From Octopus sinensis (lineage: Eukaryota): a stretch of 9,276 nt of DNA. The stretch is from positions 1-9,276 of the forward strand of contig NW_021828006.1 of NCBI RefSeq assembly GCF_006345805.1. Direction: 5' to 3'. Both the position numbers and the translations under genes were made by a program. The notes under the pieces are model-generated. The model was not told the DNA's origin, did not search any database, and saw only the letters and a program-made list of their open reading frames with translations. Positions 1-9,276 of the stretch are shown piece after piece. How positions within the stretch are numbered: the first letter of the stretch is position 1; every line of letters starts with the position of its first letter.

Positions 1-147
1 GGATTTCATTTGTTTTATAGCTTTTGTTGTTTCTTCATCTTCTTCTTCTTCTTCGTGTTTATTAGGTGGTATGATTTCTTGTTTGTATTTGTCAGCTTCC
101 TTAAATACTGAGAACAGTTTTTTGTTTTGCTCGTGTTTTGCCGCTAT

Positions 148-148
148 C

Positions 149-184
<36 letters not shown>

Positions 185-345
185 TTTTATTATTATTATT
201 ATTATATTATTATTATTATTATTATTATTAATATTAATTATTATTATTATTATTATTATATATTATTATTATTATATTATTATTAATTATTATTATTATT
301 AATATTATTATTATTATATTATTATTATTATTATTATTATATTAA

Positions 346-376
<31 letters not shown>

Positions 377-543
377 ATTTTTATTATTAAATTATTAATA
401 TTATTATTATTATTATATTAATATTATTATTATTTTTATTATTATTATTATTATTATTATTAATATTATTATTATTATTAATATTATTATATTATTATAT
501 TAAATTTTTATTATTATTATTATATTATTATTATTATAATTAA

Positions 544-585
<42 letters not shown>

Positions 586-669
586 ATTATTATTATTATT
601 ATTATTTTTTATTAATATTATTATTATTATTATTATTAATTATTATTATTATTATTATTATTATTATAA

Positions 670-706
<37 letters not shown>
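148..706. repeat. Long imperfect (TTA)n microsatellite
   Basis: ~560 bp of tta units with single-base slips, read directly from the sequence. Confidence 0.98.
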
Positions 707-1376: not shown

Positions 1377-1500
1377 TAGAATGAGTACAAAGCTTAAAAA
1401 TACGTCCCGCTGTCGATTTCTTCAACTAAAAAACCATTTAAGGCGGTGCTCCAGCATGGTCGCAGTCAAATGACTGAAACAAGTAAAAGAATAAAAGAAT
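1377..1500 (+). mobile_element. SINE 3' fragment (same family as 6713-7136)
   Basis: tagaatgagtac...gtcgatttcttcaactaa...aggcggtgctccagcatggtcgcagtcaaatgactgaaacaagtaaaagaat is the reverse complement of the sequence at 6720-6820 and 7150-7280. Confidence 0.88.
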
Positions 1501-1509
1501 ACACATAGA

Positions 1510-2692
1510 TGCACGCACACACGCACACACACTCACACACACACACACACTCACACACGCACACACACTCACACACGCACAGACACTCACACACACACAC
1601 TCACACACGCACACACACTCACACACGCACAGACACTCACACACGCACACACACTCACACACGCACAGACACTCACACACGCACACACACTGACACACAC
1701 ACACTCACACACGCACATCACACGCACATACACGCACACACGCACAGACACGCACACACGCACAGACACTCACACACGCACAGACACTCACACACGCACA
1801 CACACTCACACACACACACTCACACACGCACATCACACTCACACACGCACACACACTCACACACGCACAGACACTCACACACGCACACACACTCACACAC
1901 GCACACACACTCACACACGCACACACACTCACACACACACACTCACACACGCACATCACACGCACAGACACGCACACACGCACAGACACTCACACACGCA
2001 CAGACACTCACACACGCACACACACTCACACACGCACACACACTCACACACACACACTCACACACGCACATCACACGCACAGACACGCACACACGCACAG
2101 ACACTCACACACGCACAGACACTCACACACGCACAGACACTCACACACACACACTCACACACGCACATCACACGCACATACACGCACACACGCACAGACA
2201 CTCACACACGCACAGACACTCACACACGCACACACACTCACCACGCACACACACTCACCACACACACTCACACACGCACATCACACGCACAGACACGCCA
2301 CACGCACAGACACTCAGACACGCACAGACACTCACACACGCAAGACACTCACACACACACACTCACACACGCACATCACACGCACATACAACGCACAACG
2401 CAAAGACACTCACACACGCACAGACACTCACAACACGCACACACACTCACACACACACACTCACACACGCACATCACACTCACACACGCACACACACTCA
2501 CACACGCACAGACACTCACACACGCACCACACACTCACACACGCACACACACTCAACACACGCAACACACATCACACACACACACTCACACACGCACATC
2601 ACACGCACAGACACGCACACACGCACAGACACTCACACACGCACAGACACTCACATACGCACACACACTCACACACGCACATACACGCATAC
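1510..2692. repeat. Compound (CA)n-derived satellite with ~18 bp subunits and higher-order structure
   Basis: Recurrent cacacacgcacagacact and cacacacgcacacacact units, with periodic catca interruptions. Confidence 0.95.

Positions 2693-3075: not shown

Positions 3076-3132
<57 letters not shown>
2924..3132. repeat. (TA)n microsatellites (2924-3030 and 3069-3132)
   Basis: Direct reading. Confidence 0.97.
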
Positions 3133-3339
3133 GTTAATCCAAACATGAAAACACAAGAGATAACACAACAACGCGAGCACGTGGAACAAGTATAGTGTTA
3201 TTGGACGCTCAGGAAAGAAGGAAAGAAAGAGGGTTTAACGTTTCGAGCGGAGCTCTTCGTCGGAAACATAGGAGAAGGAAAGATCCAGAGAAGGGAAGAT
3301 AGAGGAAAAAAATCGCCAACGGTACACACGCGGTCACAT
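3132..3339 (-). mobile_element. ~208 bp hammerhead-bearing interspersed repeat (copy 1), probably derived from a Penelope-like element
   Basis: The reverse complement aligns over its full length, at roughly 90% by eye, with 7525-7729. It contains CCGACGAAGAGCTCCGCTCGAAACGT and ends in (TA)n. The Penelope assignment is inferred from the motif type. Confidence 0.75.
3233..3267 (-). ncRNA. Minimal type I hammerhead ribozyme-like motif, intact GAAA
   Basis: Minus strand reads GUUU-CCGACGA-A-GAGC(UCC)GCUC-GAAA-CG-UU-AAAC. Stem I is GUUU/AAAC, stem II is 4 bp, and a palindromic ACGU replaces stem III. Confidence 0.7.
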
Positions 3340-3371
3340 ATACATACAAACACACATACATATATATATGT

Positions 3372-3517
3372 ATGTGGCAGGTTTCCACACAGTTTCCACC
3401 TACCAAATAGTTCACTCCCAAGCATGAGATTATAGTGGAAGACATTTGACCGAGGCACTACACAGGACCGAACCCGAAATCTTGTGGTTAAAAGCAACCT
3501 TCTTACCACACAGCTAC
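3372..3517 (-). mobile_element. Diverged tRNA-derived SINE head
   Basis: Homologous to 6977-7136 (cagtttccacctaccaaat; gaacccgaaatcttgtggtt; cttaccacacagcta), with degenerate A and B boxes. Confidence 0.78.
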
Positions 3518-3520
3518 ATA

Positions 3521-5180
3521 CTAGAAGAGATACCCGGCATTGCCTGTGTTACATGCAATTGAACAATTGAATAATTAGACTTCTTTGTTATATTTTCTGC
3601 AATGAAGTGGAATACCTATGATTGCAATTTCATCAAAATTGCAGATGAGGGTCATTTCCCTCTTTACACACCCTAAAAAAATAGTAATCATGACAATAGT
3701 AATCCGATACTACTGATTTTTATGCGCAGATTCCAAAATTCCAGTCTTATAGAACCTGCTAAAAGGATTTTGTTCCTGAAAAATGGAGGTCATGGAGCTC
3801 TGAAATGTGGGAGTTAAGGCCCCTATTGGGGGTGGGTGTCTTAATGTCAACCAGAGAAGTTGAATTGTTGAAAATCTTTTTAACTTGGGTCTTATATCTA
3901 TTGTTTGAATTTCTTTGAAATAGGAAATATATGTTCACTGAGTTTGTAAAAGAGAGCAAAGCTACAGGAAACCAATAGACGAATGATCACAATAAGCAGT
4001 CAGCTACCCTACCCTAGTCGTTACCACTCCCAATGTAGTATTCCTCACCATCCAGGTGACAAGCACAGCCGTAAGATGCATTACAAATCTATAGCAATTG
4101 GAAGGGCGTGACCCAACTGAAATAAACATTAACAACTGTGTGACGTGAGGGCGAAGGAGAAATGAAAGTGTCGTCTTTGGAGTTTGCAAATGACCACTAT
4201 ACTGATACATAAGTGGACAGAATAAATTTACAATCTATAAATGTCTTTGAATAACCAGTCACTCATCTGGGAAGGCTTTGAAATCAATGTTACCATCTGG
4301 GGACTATGTGTGACCCAGTGATAATAAAAAGACTCAAAGGAGGTCTGCAATCAAATAACTTTACTCAACACTTTGCAACTGAATCAGTGGAGACAAAGAT
4401 GCCTCTCATTTACTTGACAATTTATGCACCACGTTGCAGAAATCACAATCTAAGTATATGTCAGAGCAAACTCTTACACTGTTGTACCATTGAATTGCAA
4501 ATAATGCTCATCTTTTATGCTCGGGTGACCCCACAGCTTCCAAGAGTACAACTGTATTCATCTTTGGTTAGACAAAATGACTAAATTGTGGGTGTTAAGT
4601 CCCCTTGAAGGGTTTTTTCTAACTTGTAAGAAGATGAAATTTTATAAATATTACTTCGTTTGTGTCTAATATCTATGGTTAAAATTTCATCAACAGCAAA
4701 AATATATGCATTGTCATGGGGGTTATGACCCTTATACAGAGAATAAAATTTCCAAATTTCGTAAAGATCCATTCAGTACTTTTGACCTAATTTTGGATCA
4801 TAAAAGAAATTATTAAAATTTGGGAGTTACGGCCCCCATTAGGGTGTCTTAGAATCCTCATGAGAAGTGGAAACTTTGAGAATACTTCTTGATGTGTGTC
4901 AATTACCCATGGTTGAAATTTCATCAACATTGAAAGGTTCTGCCCTCTTTAAGCCATCTGAAATTCAAACCAAACATATTGCATTATACCTGCCCTTCTG
5001 CATTGAATCTAAGTTCCAAATATCATAAGGATCCATTCAGTAATTTTGGTCCATGACATTGTATGAAACACACAAGGCTTGGATTTTGTGTTCCAAATTT
5101 CATTATGATCGGTGCAGCAGTTTTCGAATGGATACGTAACACATGAACACACATAAAGACATTGGCTTTGATATAATAGA
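3521..5180 (-). mobile_element. Non-autonomous Helitron-like element
   Basis: The minus strand begins A|TCTATTATATCAAAGCC at 5180 and ends ggcaatgccgggtatctcttCTAG|T at 3521. This gives 5'-TC, 3'-CTAG, an A/T target and a decayed GC-rich subterminal hairpin. Internal degenerate subrepeats are present. Confidence 0.65.
4150..4480 (+). pseudogene. Heavily decayed non-LTR retrotransposon RT fragment (tentative)
   Basis: With one frameshift it translates as KVSSLEFAND/TILIHKWTE*IYNL*MSLNNQSLIWEGFEINV, resembling the LINE RT region xLxFADDxxLx...GLxIN. A downstream IYL may correspond to YLG. Confidence 0.4.
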
Positions 5181-5275: not shown

Positions 5276-5337
5276 AAAGATAAATTGATAGATACAAACG
5301 GAGTGGCAAAGGAAAATATGAGACACTGCCTAGTGCT

Positions 5338-5640
5338 TTTTTTATTTTGATAAGCCTGGTACTTATTCTATCAGTTTCTTCTTGTCAGGCCAGTAAGTTA
5401 CAGAGATGTAAATAAACGAACAGCAGTTGTGAAGCAGTGATGAAGGCGAAACACAGAGACAAACACACACACATAGACTTACATATATATATATATATAT
5501 ACGTATATATACGATTGATTTCTTTCAGTTTCTGTCTACAAAATCCTCTGACAAGGCTTTGGTTGGTCTGAGGCTATAGCAGAATACACATGCCAAGTCA
5601 CCACACAGTGGGACTGAACCCAGGATCATGTGTTTTGGAA
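5338..5640 (-). mobile_element. Older diverged SINE copy with internal (CA)/(TA) microsatellite, truncated at both ends
   Basis: Collinear with 6790-7100: aagcctggtacttattctatcag...microsatellite...ttctttcagtttctgtctac...cagtgggactgaacc. B box at 5610-5620. Confidence 0.85.
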
Positions 5641-5743
5641 CCCAGTTTATATATATAAAGATATATCAGAAAGTAAACATGGAGATATAGCATTTAATAA
5701 CAATTTATTGAATATATATATATATATATAGATATATATATAT

Positions 5744-5969
5744 ATTATATTAAATTAGAGTATACCCCACTATTAGGCAAATCAAACAGTGAAAAACATA
5801 AGCCAATACATAAAATTAATTTAAAATATAAAAATTGAAAATTAAAATTTTTTTAATTTTAATTTTTATTTGTTAACTTTTTATATTTTAAATTAATTTT
5901 ATGTATTGGCTTATGTTGTTCACTATTTGATTTTGCCTAATAGTGGGTTTATCTCTAATTTAATATAAT
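5744..5969. repeat. Long AT-rich inverted repeat (arms 5744-5834 and 5878-5969)
   Basis: ~91 bp arms are reverse complements with a few mismatches and one indel. The spacer is itself palindromic around 5849. Confidence 0.95.
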
Positions 5970-6057
5970 ATAATATAATATATTTATACTATAAAAATTG
6001 GATTTAATCTTAAATCTATTTTTCCCTGTAAGTTTAGATTCATTCCCAATATTATGA

Positions 6058-6180
6058 TTTATATATATATATATAATTATATATTATAATATATATATAT
6101 ATATATATATATTATATTAATAGATATATAGATATTATATATATATATAATATATATATATAGTATATATATATATATAC
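6058..6180. repeat. Imperfect (TA)n microsatellite
   Basis: Direct reading. Confidence 0.95.
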
Positions 6181-6305
6181 ATAACATCATATATTATATT
6201 TGGTAAAAACGGTAAGATAAAAAGAAAGAAAGAGACCTCAATATTATGTAAATAGAGGAAATTTTCCCCTTTATATAACGGTATTTTTTCATAGCGTTTT
6301 TCAGA

Positions 6306-6382
6306 TGGCCAGATAACCGAAGAGATGGTGTTGTTTTAGAATTCCACTTCGGCACCCGAAACTCAGAGTTTTATCTTGGCTA
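6306..6382 (+). ncRNA. Type I hammerhead ribozyme-like motif with CCGA core
   Basis: Stem I UGGCCAGAUAA/UUAUCU(U)GGCUA (11 bp, one bulge); core CCGAAGA 6317-6323; G6324-C6357 pair plus a 7 bp stem II; GAAA 6358-6361; stem III ACU(CAG)AGU; GUU site at 6368-6370. Confidence 0.8.
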
Positions 6383-6504
6383 CCGAATAATTGTCACATA
6401 TTAATTTACAGATATATATACATTATACACACACAAACACACACATATATATATACATATATTCATGTACGTATGCATATGCCTACATACACACATATGC
6501 ATCT

Positions 6505-6702
6505 ACCTTTGCGCACCCCACACTGCTTGGTAAACAGTGTTTGTTTAAGTTCCCATAACGAAGCGGTTCGGCAAGAGACACTGATAGAATAAGTATGCGG
6601 CTTTTAGAAAAACTAGGTATAGATGGCGATCACTGTTGGAAGAAAACCCTTGAAGGCGGTGCCCCAGTATGGCCAAAATCCAATGACCAAAACAAGATGA
6701 AT
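6505..6702 (+). mobile_element. Diverged SINE body/3' fragment, tail-to-tail with the next copy
   Basis: cccataacgaagcggttcggcaagagacactgatagaataagta...aaggcggtgccccagtatggcc is the inverted homologue of 6720-6900. Confidence 0.85.
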
Positions 6703-6712
6703 GTAACAGGTA

Positions 6713-6928
6713 CTCTTTACACATTTACTTGTTTCAGTCATTTGACTGTGGCCATGCTGGAGCACAACCTTTTTAGTCGATCAAATCGATCCCAGGACTT
6801 ATTCTTTGTAAGCCTAGTACTTATTCTATCAGTCTCTTTTGCCGAACCGGTAAGTTACGGGGACGTAAACACACCTGCATCGGTTGTCAAGCGATGTTGG
6901 GGGAGAAACACAAACATACACACACACA

Positions 6929-6976
<48 letters not shown>

Positions 6977-7136
6977 GACGACGGGCTTCTTTCAGTTTCC
7001 GTCTACCAAATCCACTCACAAGGCTTGGGTCGGCCCGAGGCTAAAGTAGAAGGCACTTGCCCAAGGTGCCACGCAGTGGGACTGAACCCGGAACCATGTG
7101 GTTGGTAAGCAAGCTCCTTACCACGCAGCCACTCCT
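6713..7136 (-). mobile_element. Near full-length tRNA-derived SINE with CORE-like motif and internal (TA)(TG)n microsatellite
   Basis: Minus strand: A-box-like TGGCTGCGTGG (7121-7131), B-box-like GGTTCAGTCCC (7078-7088), and CACCTTGGGCAAGTG (7054-7068) resembling the CORE-SINE motif. Microsatellite at ~6915-6976, then a body shared with the other copies. Confidence 0.9.
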
Positions 7137-7149
7137 ACGTCTATGTGTT

Positions 7150-7290
7150 ATGCTATTCTTTAATTCTTTTAATTGTTCCAGTCATTTGACTGTGGCCATG
7201 CTGCAGCACCGCCTTGAATGGTTTTTAGTCGAACAAATCGACCCCAGGACTTATTTTCTAAACCCGAGTACTTATTCTATCGGTTTCTTT
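7150..7290 (-). mobile_element. SINE 3' fragment
   Basis: cagtcatttgactgtggccatgctgcagcaccgcc...gtcgaacaaatcgaccccaggacttatt is nearly identical to 6735-6840. Confidence 0.9.
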
Positions 7291-7354
7291 GTCGTATCGT
7301 CAGGTCCCAAAACACTGTCGGCCCAAGACCTCTTAAAAATATGGATCCATCAGA

Positions 7355-7524: not shown

Positions 7525-7729
7525 ATGTGACCGCGTGTGTACCGTTGGCGATTTTTTTTCGTCTGTCTTCCCTTCTCTGGATCTTTCCTTCTCCTATGTT
7601 TCCGACGAAGAGCTCCGCTCTAAACGTTAAACCCTCCTCCTTTCCTTCTTTCCTGAGCGTCCAATAATACTATATTTGTTCACGTCCTCGCGCTGTTGTG
7701 TTTTTTGTGCTTTGTTGTTTGGATTAACT
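7525..7729 (+). mobile_element. ~205 bp hammerhead-bearing repeat (copy 2), inverted relative to 3132-3339
   Basis: Full-length alignment to the reverse complement of 3132-3339, followed by (TA)n. Confidence 0.75.
7598..7632 (+). ncRNA. Minimal hammerhead motif, probably inactive (GAAA to UAAA at 7621)
   Basis: Identical to 3233-3267 except at the G12-equivalent position, which is T. Confidence 0.6.
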
Positions 7730-8267: not shown

Positions 8268-8345
8268 TGAGGTGGTGGCGGTGGTGATGGTGTTGTGGTG
8301 GTGGTGGGAGTGGTGGGAGTGGAGGTATGCTTGAAGGTGGGAGTG
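8268..8345. repeat. (GGT)-rich low-complexity tract
   Basis: Direct reading. Confidence 0.8.
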
Positions 8346-8574: not shown

Positions 8575-8660
8575 CTTCTTCTTCTTATTATTATTATTGT
8601 TGTTGTTGTTGTTGTTATTATTATTATTATTATTATTGTTGTTATTATTATTATTATTAT
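8575..8660. repeat. Compound (TTC)(TTA)(TTG)n microsatellite
   Basis: Direct reading. Confidence 0.97.
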
Positions 8661-9215
8661 TGAGTGAGAGAGCAGTGCATGCCATCAAAGTGACACTAGA
8701 GTACAAATATACGAAGCCCAGTATACCCATCATGACTACCCGTCTGATAAGGGTACACCAGGCACATGCATCACAACCATATGTGCGAGACATGGTGATC
8801 TCATATGAAGATAAACAGCACATGACCTTGCAGGTGGGGCCCAGTTAGAATTTTCTTCAGGTCAGTTAACCCATCCAGCTCAAAAGGTCCCTGAATAAAG
8901 GCTGTTTAAGGATGTTGAACGAAACACCCATGTTTCCAGAGGTGAATTATTCAAACCCCAAATAATCCTTCTCAACACATGGCTATGATGCTCCCCCACT
9001 ACTTCTGCTCGTGATCAGAGATGCACATATCATCAGCCGCTAAGGGACATACTCAACTGGTTAAGGTCAAACAACAGACCAGCAAATCTGTGGTATTGAG
9101 CAGAATATTTGCTGTAGCCCATCTTTTATACCAAGACAAAACAATGAACATGATAACACTTCCAGTCAGATAAGATCAGAAGCCATGAGAGCCACTGCCT
9201 GGTACTGCATCAGGG

Positions 9216-9217
<2 letters not shown>
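8661..9217. mobile_element. 557 bp complex-sequence element with TG...CA ends, embedded in (TTA)n; class unresolved
   Basis: Sharp boundaries tgagtgagag...catcagggca between two same-orientation (TTA)n arrays, with no convincing ORF. I also recall it as a common octopus repeat (unverified). Confidence 0.6.
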
Positions 9218-9264
<47 letters not shown>

Positions 9265-9276
9265 TATTATTATTAT
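9218..9276. repeat. (TTA)n microsatellite running off the window end
   Basis: Direct reading. Confidence 0.98.

What the first reader, a model, noticed from the sequence alone, without database searches (positions are those of the whole stretch)
6306..6382. Complete type I hammerhead ribozyme fold with a CCGA catalytic core
Seen in sequence: an 11 bp stem I with a single U bulge (6377) six pairs from the core, CCGAAGA, the G10.1-C11.1 pair (6324/6357), a 2 nt bulge, a 7 bp stem II with a 16 nt loop, GAAA, a 3 bp stem III with a CAG loop, and GUU with predicted cleavage after 6370. The only core deviation is U4C. Established knowledge: a natural CCGA variant in peach latent mosaic viroid still self-cleaves, and type I hammerheads occur in Penelope-like elements and non-LTR retrozymes of animals. 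Inference: this is a potentially active ribozyme in a cephalopod repeat. The stem I bulge may dock with loop II, and the weak stem III may require dimerisation.
Basis: partly seen in the sequence, partly recalled or inferred. Interest (0 to 1): 0.85.

Follow-up and report, generated by a model that had tools for sequence, protein, structure and literature searches.

The report
Solo hammerhead-like motif with CCGA core
The hammerhead-ribozyme-shaped sequence is really there and is too good to be chance, but it is most likely a lone, weakened or dead copy of the ribozyme motifs that Penelope-like retroelements scatter through animal genomes, which is ordinary.

Summary
A type I descriptor allowing one core mismatch finds 2 independent sites in the window, against 0.001 per dinucleotide shuffle of its complex sequence, so it is not chance.

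Support for an active ribozyme is weak.
- No Rfam hammerhead model matches, even at E<=10.
- The hammerhead fold is 7 kcal/mol worse than the predicted best fold, which pairs CCGAAG with CUUCGG.
- U4C is a low-activity change (PMC3088659, PMC9901934).
- The window holds no second copy, tandem repeat, reverse transcriptase or GIY-YIG remnant.

The motif lies in a ~220-nt island between (TA)n tracts, a preferred target of Penelope-like elements. An unrelated ~205-nt repeat, present as two inverted copies that each end in (TA)n, carries a minimal hammerhead with the same CCGA core and GUU site.

My best reading is a solitary Penelope-like or retrozyme-type hammerhead relic or variant with weak or no activity. 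No family copies could be fetched, so covariation is untested. Interest is low to moderate. The recurrence of C4 is the one point worth following.

The parts
6306..6316 (+). Helix I, 5' strand (UGGCCAGAUAA)
   Evidence: Pairs with 6371-6382: 11 pairs, one G-U, U6377 bulged. Kept in the MFE in every sequence context tried.
6317..6323 (+). 5' core strand CCGAAGA (C3 C4 G5 A6 A7 G8 A9), with U4 replaced by C
   Evidence: In the MFE, 6317-6322 pairs with CUUCGG at 6347-6352 instead.
6324..6357 (+). Helix II: G10.1(6324)-C11.1(6357), 2-nt 5' bulge at 6325-6326, 7-pair stem 6327-6333/6350-6356 (two U-G), 16-nt loop 6334-6349
   Evidence: The long helix II and the bulge on the 5' side recall Penelope-like-element min-hammerheads (PMC4209133). 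There, however, the extra nucleotide lies before G10.1, not after it.
6358..6361 (+). 3' core strand GAAA (G12 A13 A14 A15.1)
6361..6369 (+). Helix III: A15.1-U16.1, C-G and U-A with loop CAG. The 9-mer ACUCAGAGU is a palindrome around a central A.
   Evidence: and direct reading of the sequence. In a dimer it would give 8 pairs and one A-A mismatch (inference).
6370..6370 (+). H17 (U); predicted cleavage between 6370 and 6371, after GUU
   Evidence: The position follows from the hammerhead numbering. Cleavage itself is not shown.
6371..6382 (+). Helix I, 3' strand (UUAUCU-U-GGCUA)
6190..6409 (+). Unique ~220-nt island that carries the motif. The motif ends 39 nt from the island's 3' edge.
   Evidence: No other copy in the window. 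Not alignable to the 3132-3339 / 7525-7729 repeat. No Rfam match on either strand over 6250-6430 at E<=10.
6057..6189 (.). (TA)n-rich microsatellite on the left of the island
   Evidence: (TA)n is a preferred target of Penelope-like elements (PMC8557442).
6410..6475 (.). (TA)n/(CA)n microsatellite on the right of the island
3132..3339 (-). Copy 1 of an unrelated ~205-nt short repeat. Both of its ends abut TA-rich microsatellite.
   Evidence: Inverted repeat I1, 95% over 129 nt.
3233..3267 (-). Minimal hammerhead-like motif in copy 1: GUUU / CCGACGA / A / GAGC-ucc-GCUC / GAAA / C-G / U / U / AAAC. Only U4C deviates from the core.
   Evidence: It has the extra nucleotide between A9 and G10.1, the G10.1-C11.1 pair, a palindromic 15.2-16.2 and a 4-pair helix I, as described for Penelope-like-element min-hammerheads (PMC4209133).
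7525..7729 (+). Copy 2 of the same short repeat, in the opposite orientation. Its 3' end runs into (TA)n and its 5' side is TA-rich.
7598..7632 (+). The same minimal motif in copy 2, with a further G12-to-U change at 7621
   Evidence: G12 is one of the two catalytic guanosines (PMC9901934), so this copy should be inactive (inference).

Best explanation
The motif is a genuine descendant of the type I hammerheads that Penelope-like retroelements (PLEs) and their non-autonomous derivatives (non-LTR retrozymes) carry. It sits near the 3' end of a solitary ~220-nt fragment inserted into a (TA)n microsatellite.

In the parent element such a motif would cut the retroelement transcript after H17, usually by pairing two copies through the short palindromic helix III. 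This copy has no partner nearby. It carries C instead of U at core position 4, and its core strand is predicted to be sequestered in a competing hairpin. It is therefore most likely a weak or dead relic, not a working ribozyme.

Shown: the anatomy, the excess over chance, the microsatellite flanks, and a second hammerhead-like family with the same CCGA core in the window. Inferred: the PLE or retrozyme origin and the low activity.
For: Anatomy and chance:
- The anatomy is exact.
- Chance rate is 1-3x10^-4 per window for the strict descriptor.
- The loose descriptor gives 0.001 sites per shuffle against 2 independent sites observed. Decoys give 0.
- Features the descriptor did not require also fit animal or PLE hammerheads (PMC4209133). 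These are six helix I pairs before a discontinuity, a long helix II with unpaired nucleotides at its 5' base, and a near-palindromic helix III.

Context:
- The island lies between (TA)n tracts, a preferred PLE target (PMC8557442).
- Most genomic PLE hammerheads are dispersed single motifs, thought to be truncated copies (PMC4209133, PMC7761336).
- A second, non-homologous short repeat has two inverted copies, each ending in (TA)n. It carries a textbook min-hammerhead with the same CCGA core and GUU site.
- All three CCGANGA heptamers in the window lie in such motifs.

Weak or dead:
- U4C lowers activity (PMC3088659), as do all single changes in the CUGA turn (PMC9901934).
- The hammerhead fold is 7 kcal/mol above the MFE.
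- There is no tandem copy.
- PLE min-hammerheads cleave poorly in vitro even with intact cores (PMC4209133).
Against: - No Rfam hammerhead model matches at any threshold tried.
- No second copy of the island was found anywhere, so family membership, conservation and covariation are untested.
- No reverse transcriptase or GIY-YIG remnant lies in the window.
- The 2-nt bulge follows G10.1 instead of preceding it as in PLE motifs, and the 16-nt loop II is unusually long.
- I do not know how many windows the first stage read, so a selected chance hit is not fully excluded.
- The recurrence of C4 in two unrelated elements argues against simple decay and fits a tolerated or selected variant better.
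Confidence: 0.55

Rival explanations
1. It is a chance look-alike. An AT-rich structured fragment happens to place CCGAAGA and GAAA at a three-way junction, has no evolutionary link to hammerheads and has no ribozyme function.
For: - No Rfam hit at E<=10.
- The core is not canonical. Published curation rules reject any hit with a core mutation (PMC3088659).
- The MFE fold uses the core strand as a helix, and the fold z-score is only -1.63.
- It is a single copy.
- The loose descriptor is expected to hit by chance on the order of several hundred times in a multi-gigabase genome, given 1.3x10^-7 per nt.
Against: - The strict descriptor is rare at 0.4-1.4x10^-8 per nt, and none of its 9 random hits combined stems I and II as long as here.
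- A second, independent hammerhead-like motif occurs in the same 9 kb. Its chance expectation is about 10^-3 per window, and it was not what selected the window.
- Both motifs share C4, C15.2-G16.2 and U17, and both lie in short elements bounded by (TA)n.
Confidence: 0.2
2. It is a working natural C4 (CCGA) hammerhead variant. In this genome the ribozymes of Penelope-like or retrozyme elements use C at position 4 as their normal core and still process transcripts, perhaps as dimers or with host factors.
For: - Two unrelated element families in one window both have U4C as their only core change.
- If single core changes were random decay, the second family would match the first about 1 time in 20 (my estimate).
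- T-to-C at this site creates a CpG, and CpG sites tend to be lost in methylated genomes. A retained CCGA therefore looks ancestral or maintained (inference).
- A U4C viroid hammerhead remains functional in vivo (PMC3088659).
Against: - U4C considerably reduces activity in vitro (PMC3088659), and all single CUGA-turn mutants were low in a deep scan (PMC9901934).
- One of the two short-repeat copies has also lost G12, so these copies are decaying.
- The sample is only three motifs from two families, with no copies from elsewhere and no expression or cleavage data.
- The island's core is predicted to be paired away.
Confidence: 0.2

Closest known systems
Minimal type I hammerheads of Penelope-like elements (Cervera & de la Pena 2014, PMC4209133)
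   Same: - Type I topology and the G10.1-C11.1 pair.
- A long helix II (7-8 pairs) with unpaired nucleotides at its 5' base.
- A short, near-palindromic helix III that suggests action as a dimer.
- Occurrence as dispersed single motifs in non-coding DNA, here with microsatellite (TA)n flanks.
- Low expected activity.
- The 3233-3267 motif in the same window fits this class almost exactly.
   Different: - C4 instead of U4.
- The bulge is 2 nt and lies after G10.1, not between A9 and G10.1.
- Helix I is long (11 pairs) rather than 4-5.
- A real 3-pair helix III with a 3-nt loop is present.
- Loop II is 16 nt.
- No pseudo-LTR, reverse transcriptase or GIY-YIG ORF is nearby.
Canonical animal type I hammerheads of non-LTR retrozymes and satellite DNA: newt, Schistosoma, mussel, coral (PMC7229834, PMC7761336)
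   Same: - Type I topology.
- Six helix I pairs before an interruption.
- A weak helix III of 1-3 pairs with a small loop.
- Low-GC host sequence and an element size in the 150-300 nt range.
   Different: - Those occur as tandem repeats with intact CUGANGA cores, a 4-pair helix II and conserved loop 1-loop 2 contacts.
- This one is a single copy with a mutated core and a long helix II, and it matches no Rfam hammerhead model.
Natural U4C hammerhead variant of peach latent mosaic viroid (Ambros & Flores 1998, as summarised in PMC3088659)
   Same: The same single core substitution, giving CCGA instead of CUGA.
   Different: That variant is a type III hammerhead in a replicating viroid with strong tertiary stabilisation and demonstrated in vivo function. 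Nothing of the kind is shown here. I could not read the primary paper.

Membership tests
Hammerhead ribozyme, type I | Three helices around the junction, with helix I open-ended, in the order I-core-II-GAAA-III-H17-I | tested here: met
   11, 1+7 and 3 pairs at the stated coordinates.
Hammerhead ribozyme, type I | Invariant core: C3 U4 G5 A6 N7 G8 A9, G12 A13 A14, A15.1-U16.1, H17 | tested here: not met
   position 4 is C and the other 12 positions fit. The curation rule of PMC3088659 rejects any core mutation. U4C is nonetheless a documented tolerated natural variant.
Hammerhead ribozyme, type I | Base pairs directly adjacent to the core: 1.1-2.1, 10.1-11.1, 15.1-16.1 | tested here: met
   A6316-U6371, G6324-C6357, A6361-U6369.
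Hammerhead ribozyme, type I | Match to the curated Rfam hammerhead covariance models | tested here: not met
   No hit at gathering score, at E<=10 on 181 nt, or at E<=10 on the whole window.
Hammerhead ribozyme, type I | The hammerhead secondary structure is the favoured fold | tested here: not met
   -12.8 against -19.8 kcal/mol, with ensemble probability 3x10^-7. The core strand pairs with 6347-6352. The energy model ignores tertiary contacts.
Hammerhead ribozyme, type I | Conservation of the core and covariation in the helices across homologues | not testable with these tools
   No homologue was obtained. The searchable DNA collections tested with the window's own common SINE do not contain it.
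Hammerhead ribozyme, type I | Site-specific self-cleavage after H17 | not testable with these tools
   This needs an in vitro transcription and cleavage assay, or mapping of RNA ends.
Penelope-like-element min-hammerhead | Enlarged helix II (6-8 pairs) | tested here: met
   1+7 pairs.
Penelope-like-element min-hammerhead | One extra nucleotide between A9 and G10.1 | tested here: not met
   the 2-nt bulge (6325-6326) lies after G10.1. The feature is met in the neighbouring motif at 3256 and 7609.
Penelope-like-element min-hammerhead | Palindromic 15.2-16.2 and loop 3 | tested here: inconclusive
   ACUC-A-GAGU is a palindrome around an odd central A, so a dimer would carry one A-A mismatch (read from the sequence).
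Penelope-like-element min-hammerhead | Location in the pseudo-LTR of an element encoding reverse transcriptase plus GIY-YIG endonuclease | tested here: not met
   No such ORF or Pfam remnant in the window. Most described motifs are solo copies, so this does not exclude that origin.
Penelope-like-element min-hammerhead | Insertion into a microsatellite, especially (TA)n | tested here: met
   (TA)n-rich tracts at 6057-6189 and 6410-6475. The target preference is described in PMC8557442.
Animal non-LTR retrozyme | Head-to-tail tandem repeats of ~150-400 nt, each with a type I hammerhead | tested here: not met
   Only a single copy in the window.

The most novel reading that the evidence does not exclude
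This genome's Penelope-like or retrozyme-type elements use a CCGA (C4) hammerhead core as their normal, maintained state. That would be a natural animal lineage of U4C hammerheads that still process RNA, seen here in two unrelated short elements within one 9-kb window.
Probability: 0.2. Interest if true: 0.55.

Novelty: new member of a known kind. Interest (0 to 1): 0.3.

Why it matters
Hammerheads in animal repeats are already known in the thousands per genome, so one more degenerate copy changes little.

The useful point is narrower. Standard screens (Rfam models, and descriptors that demand an intact CUGANGA) would miss both motif families in this window. If C4 proves to be the consensus state in this lineage, that would be new in two ways. 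The U-turn position 4 would be more tolerant in vivo than mutational scans suggest. Ribozyme-bearing retroelements would also be undercounted in such genomes.

Tried and rejected
- **Rfam/Infernal.** Run on the whole window at gathering score and at E<=10, and on 181-nt and 101-nt sub-windows. No hammerhead or other ribozyme appeared. The weak hits are microsatellite artefacts resembling miRNA models.
- **tRNA or tmRNA origin.** None found.
- **Second copy in the window.** None for the island. The island is not homologous to the short repeat at 3132-3339 / 7525-7729.
- **Copies elsewhere, by DNA.** Exact-pattern scans of the metagenome, GTDB-genome and viral contig collections gave nothing. 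Three metagenome hits to the short-repeat 22-mer proved to be one GC-rich bacterial gene, a chance match. As a control, the window's own abundant SINE is also absent from the genome and viral collections, so those negatives say nothing.
- **Copies elsewhere, by protein.** Searching concatenated frame translations of the island and of the short repeat gave no hits. Exact look-up of three window ORFs found nothing on record.
- **Penelope-like coding remnants.** No ORF of note. Pfam on six frames of 3330-5160 found no reverse transcriptase or GIY-YIG.
- **Dimer energy.** The dimeric hammerhead is not a nested structure in a two-strand fold, so its energy could not be evaluated. I dropped this.
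- **Literature.** Sequence-string searches to identify the taxon or the SINE gave nothing. The primary U4C paper, the Lunse 2017 paper and the Terminon paper are not held. The supplement with Naiad consensus sequences is not held.

Full report
**Observation**

I read 6200-6500 and checked every claimed pair by script.
- Helix I is 6306-6316 paired with 6371-6382: 11 pairs, one G-U, and U6377 bulged after six pairs.
- The 5' core strand is CCGAAGA at 6317-6323.
- G6324 pairs with C6357, followed by a two-nucleotide bulge at 6325-6326.
- Helix II is 6327-6333 paired with 6350-6356: seven pairs, two of them U-G, closing a 16-nt loop.
- GAAA is at 6358-6361.
- Helix III is 6361-6363 paired with 6367-6369, with loop CAG.
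- U6370 is H17.

Twelve of the 13 conserved core positions fit, and position 4 is C instead of U.

**Is it more than chance?**

It allows one core mismatch and requires helix I of at least 5 pairs, G10.1-C11.1 plus a helix II of at least 4 pairs with a bulge allowed, GAAA, a helix III of at least 3 pairs, and H17.
- It found only this site in the window.
- It found none in 4x10^7 nt of Markov sequence.
- It found 2 and 7 sites in two sets of 5x10^8 random nt. That is about 1-3x10^-4 per window counting both strands.
- None of those 9 random hits combined a helix I of at least 6 contiguous pairs with a helix II as long as here.

A looser descriptor follows Cervera & de la Pena. It requires helix I of at least 4 pairs, allows an optional extra nucleotide after A9, and accepts a helix III of at least 2 pairs or the minimal form.
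- It hits random sequence at 1.3x10^-7 per nt.
- It hits dinucleotide shuffles of the window's 6265 nt of complex sequence 3 times in 3000.
- Reversed and complemented decoys give 0.
- The real window has two independent sites.

So the motif is not a chance event at the scale of one window. At genome scale the loose descriptor would still produce chance hits on the order of several hundred, and I do not know how many windows the first stage read.

**Evidence against a working ribozyme**

- Rfam 15 gives no hammerhead hit. This holds at gathering score, at E<=10 on a 181-nt sub-window where the filters are laxest, and at E<=10 on the whole window.
- ViennaRNA does not predict the hammerhead fold. 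The MFE is -19.8 kcal/mol. It keeps helices I and III but pairs the core strand CCGAAG (6317-6322) with CUUCGG (6347-6352).
- The drawn hammerhead is -12.8 kcal/mol, with an ensemble probability of 3x10^-7. The same competing hairpin appears in three longer sequence contexts.
- The 77-mer is not unusually stable, with a z-score of -1.63.
PMC3088659 states that the U4C variant 'considerably decreases activity in vitro' yet permits viroid infectivity.
- A complete single- and double-mutant scan found that all changes in the CUGA turn other than the C3-G8 swap have low activity (PMC9901934).

**Context**

The window is repeat-rich animal-type DNA with microsatellites and several SINE copies. It has no credible ORF and no tRNA. 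I could not verify that it is cephalopod.

The motif lies in a ~220-nt stretch of unique sequence (6190-6409) bounded by (TA)n-rich tracts at 6057-6189 and 6410-6475. There is no second copy in the window and no tandem arrangement. Six-frame Pfam of 3330-5160 found no reverse transcriptase or GIY-YIG remnant.

The literature makes this context meaningful.
- Penelope-like elements carry type I hammerheads in their pseudo-LTRs near the 3' end.
- Most genomic copies are dispersed single motifs, interpreted as truncated elements.
- These motifs have an enlarged helix II (7-8 pairs), an unpaired nucleotide at the 5' base of helix II, a conserved G10.1-C11.1 and a short palindromic helix III. They cleave poorly in vitro and probably act as dimers (PMC4209133, PMC7761336).
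- Penelope-like elements also show an insertion bias for microsatellites, (TA)n among them (PMC8557442).
- Animal non-LTR retrozymes appear to be non-autonomous derivatives of their pseudo-LTRs (bioRxiv 10.64898/2026.07.22.740005).

**A second hammerhead-like family in the same window**

The arms of the strongest inverted repeat (95% over 129 nt) are two copies of a ~205-nt element, at 3132-3339 on the minus strand and 7525-7729 on the plus strand. Each runs into (TA)n at its 3' end, and their 5' sides are TA-rich.

On the minus strand, 3267 to 3233 reads GUUU CCGACGA A GAGC-ucc-GCUC GAAA CG U U AAAC. That is a minimal hammerhead with these features:
- the extra nucleotide after A9;
- G10.1-C11.1;
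- a 4-pair helix II;
- a palindromic C15.2-G16.2;
- U16.1 and U17;
- a 4-pair helix I.

Again U4C is the only core deviation. The literature-based descriptor finds it. The other copy (7598-7632) is identical apart from G12 changed to U at 7621. Because G12 is catalytic, that copy should be dead.

This element is not alignable to the island, so it is an independent family. All three CCGANGA heptamers in the window belong to hammerhead-like motifs. This motif did not select the window, and its chance expectation is about 10^-3 per window. It therefore shows that hammerhead-derived motifs are a recurrent part of this genome's short repeats, which raises the odds that the island motif is one too.

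**What could not be done**

The decisive test is conservation and covariation across family copies, and it was not possible.
- Pattern scans of the metagenome, GTDB-genome and viral collections returned nothing relevant.
- Three metagenome hits were a chance match in one GC-rich bacterial gene.
- The window's own common SINE is absent from the genome and viral collections, so those negatives are uninformative.
- Searching the protein collection with frame translations of both elements, in the hope of finding spurious ORF calls on sister copies, gave nothing.
- Exact look-ups of window ORFs found no record.

**Verdict**

- **Best explanation (0.55).** A solitary Penelope-like or retrozyme-type type I hammerhead on a truncated fragment in a (TA)n tract. 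It carries the U4C change and is probably weak or inactive in this copy. The anatomy, statistics and context are shown; the origin and the activity are inferred.
- **Rival: chance look-alike (0.2).** Supported by the Rfam negative, the competing fold and the single copy.
- **Rival: working C4-core variant (0.2).** Supported by the recurrence of U4C, C15.2-G16.2 and U17 in two unrelated elements. Opposed by the known cost of U4C and by the visible decay (G12U) of one copy.

Hammerheads in animal repeats are well known, so I score this as a new member of a known kind with low to moderate interest. The C4 recurrence is the one thread worth a genome-wide check.

Noticed in passing
window 3132-3339 (-) and 7525-7729 (+); motifs at 3233-3267 (-) and 7598-7632 (+): Two inverted copies (95% over 129 nt) of a ~205-nt repeat, each running into (TA)n at its 3' end. 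Each carries a Penelope-like-element-type minimal hammerhead with a CCGACGA core (U4C). The plus-strand copy also has G12 changed to U.
   Followed up: partly
window 5779-5839 / 5873-5933, outer arms 5725-5781 / 5932-5988: A long AT-rich near-perfect palindrome (61-nt arms, 93% complementary, 33-nt spacer), embedded in (TA)n. It looks like a MITE or a foldback element.
   Followed up: partly
window 1429-1501 (-), 5330-5650, 6640-7300: Several copies and fragments of one SINE-like family, with shared blocks such as CAGTCATTTGACTGTGGCCATGCTG and GGGACTGAACCC. One fragment is inverted and 90% complementary to 7154-7226. The 25-mer is absent from the prokaryote-genome and viral contig collections.
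   Followed up: partly
window 1500-2690: A 1.2-kb complex CA-rich minisatellite (CACACGCA / CACACTCA units, with a higher-order period of about 238 nt). It reads as a spurious 412-aa 'ORF' made of His-Thr repeats.
   Followed up: no
window 3600-5130: Diverged direct repeats spaced at about 234-282 nt (for example 4629-4695 / 4863-4929 and 4729-4784 / 4993-5048). No Pfam match in six frames.
   Followed up: partly
window 140-700, 8575-8660, 9215-9276; 730-1320 and 8270-8340: (ATT)n microsatellites lie near both ends of the window. GGT/GTG-rich tracts (strong GC skew) lie inside them on both sides, suggesting a larger-scale inverted or duplicated arrangement.
   Followed up: no
L001-L003 (metagenome contigs Ga0172368/69/73): The 22-mer TTTCCGACGAAGAGCTCCGCTC occurs by chance in one GC-rich (56-58%) bacterial sequence that is identical over the ~250 nt inspected in three contigs. 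It is unrelated to the window.
   Followed up: yes
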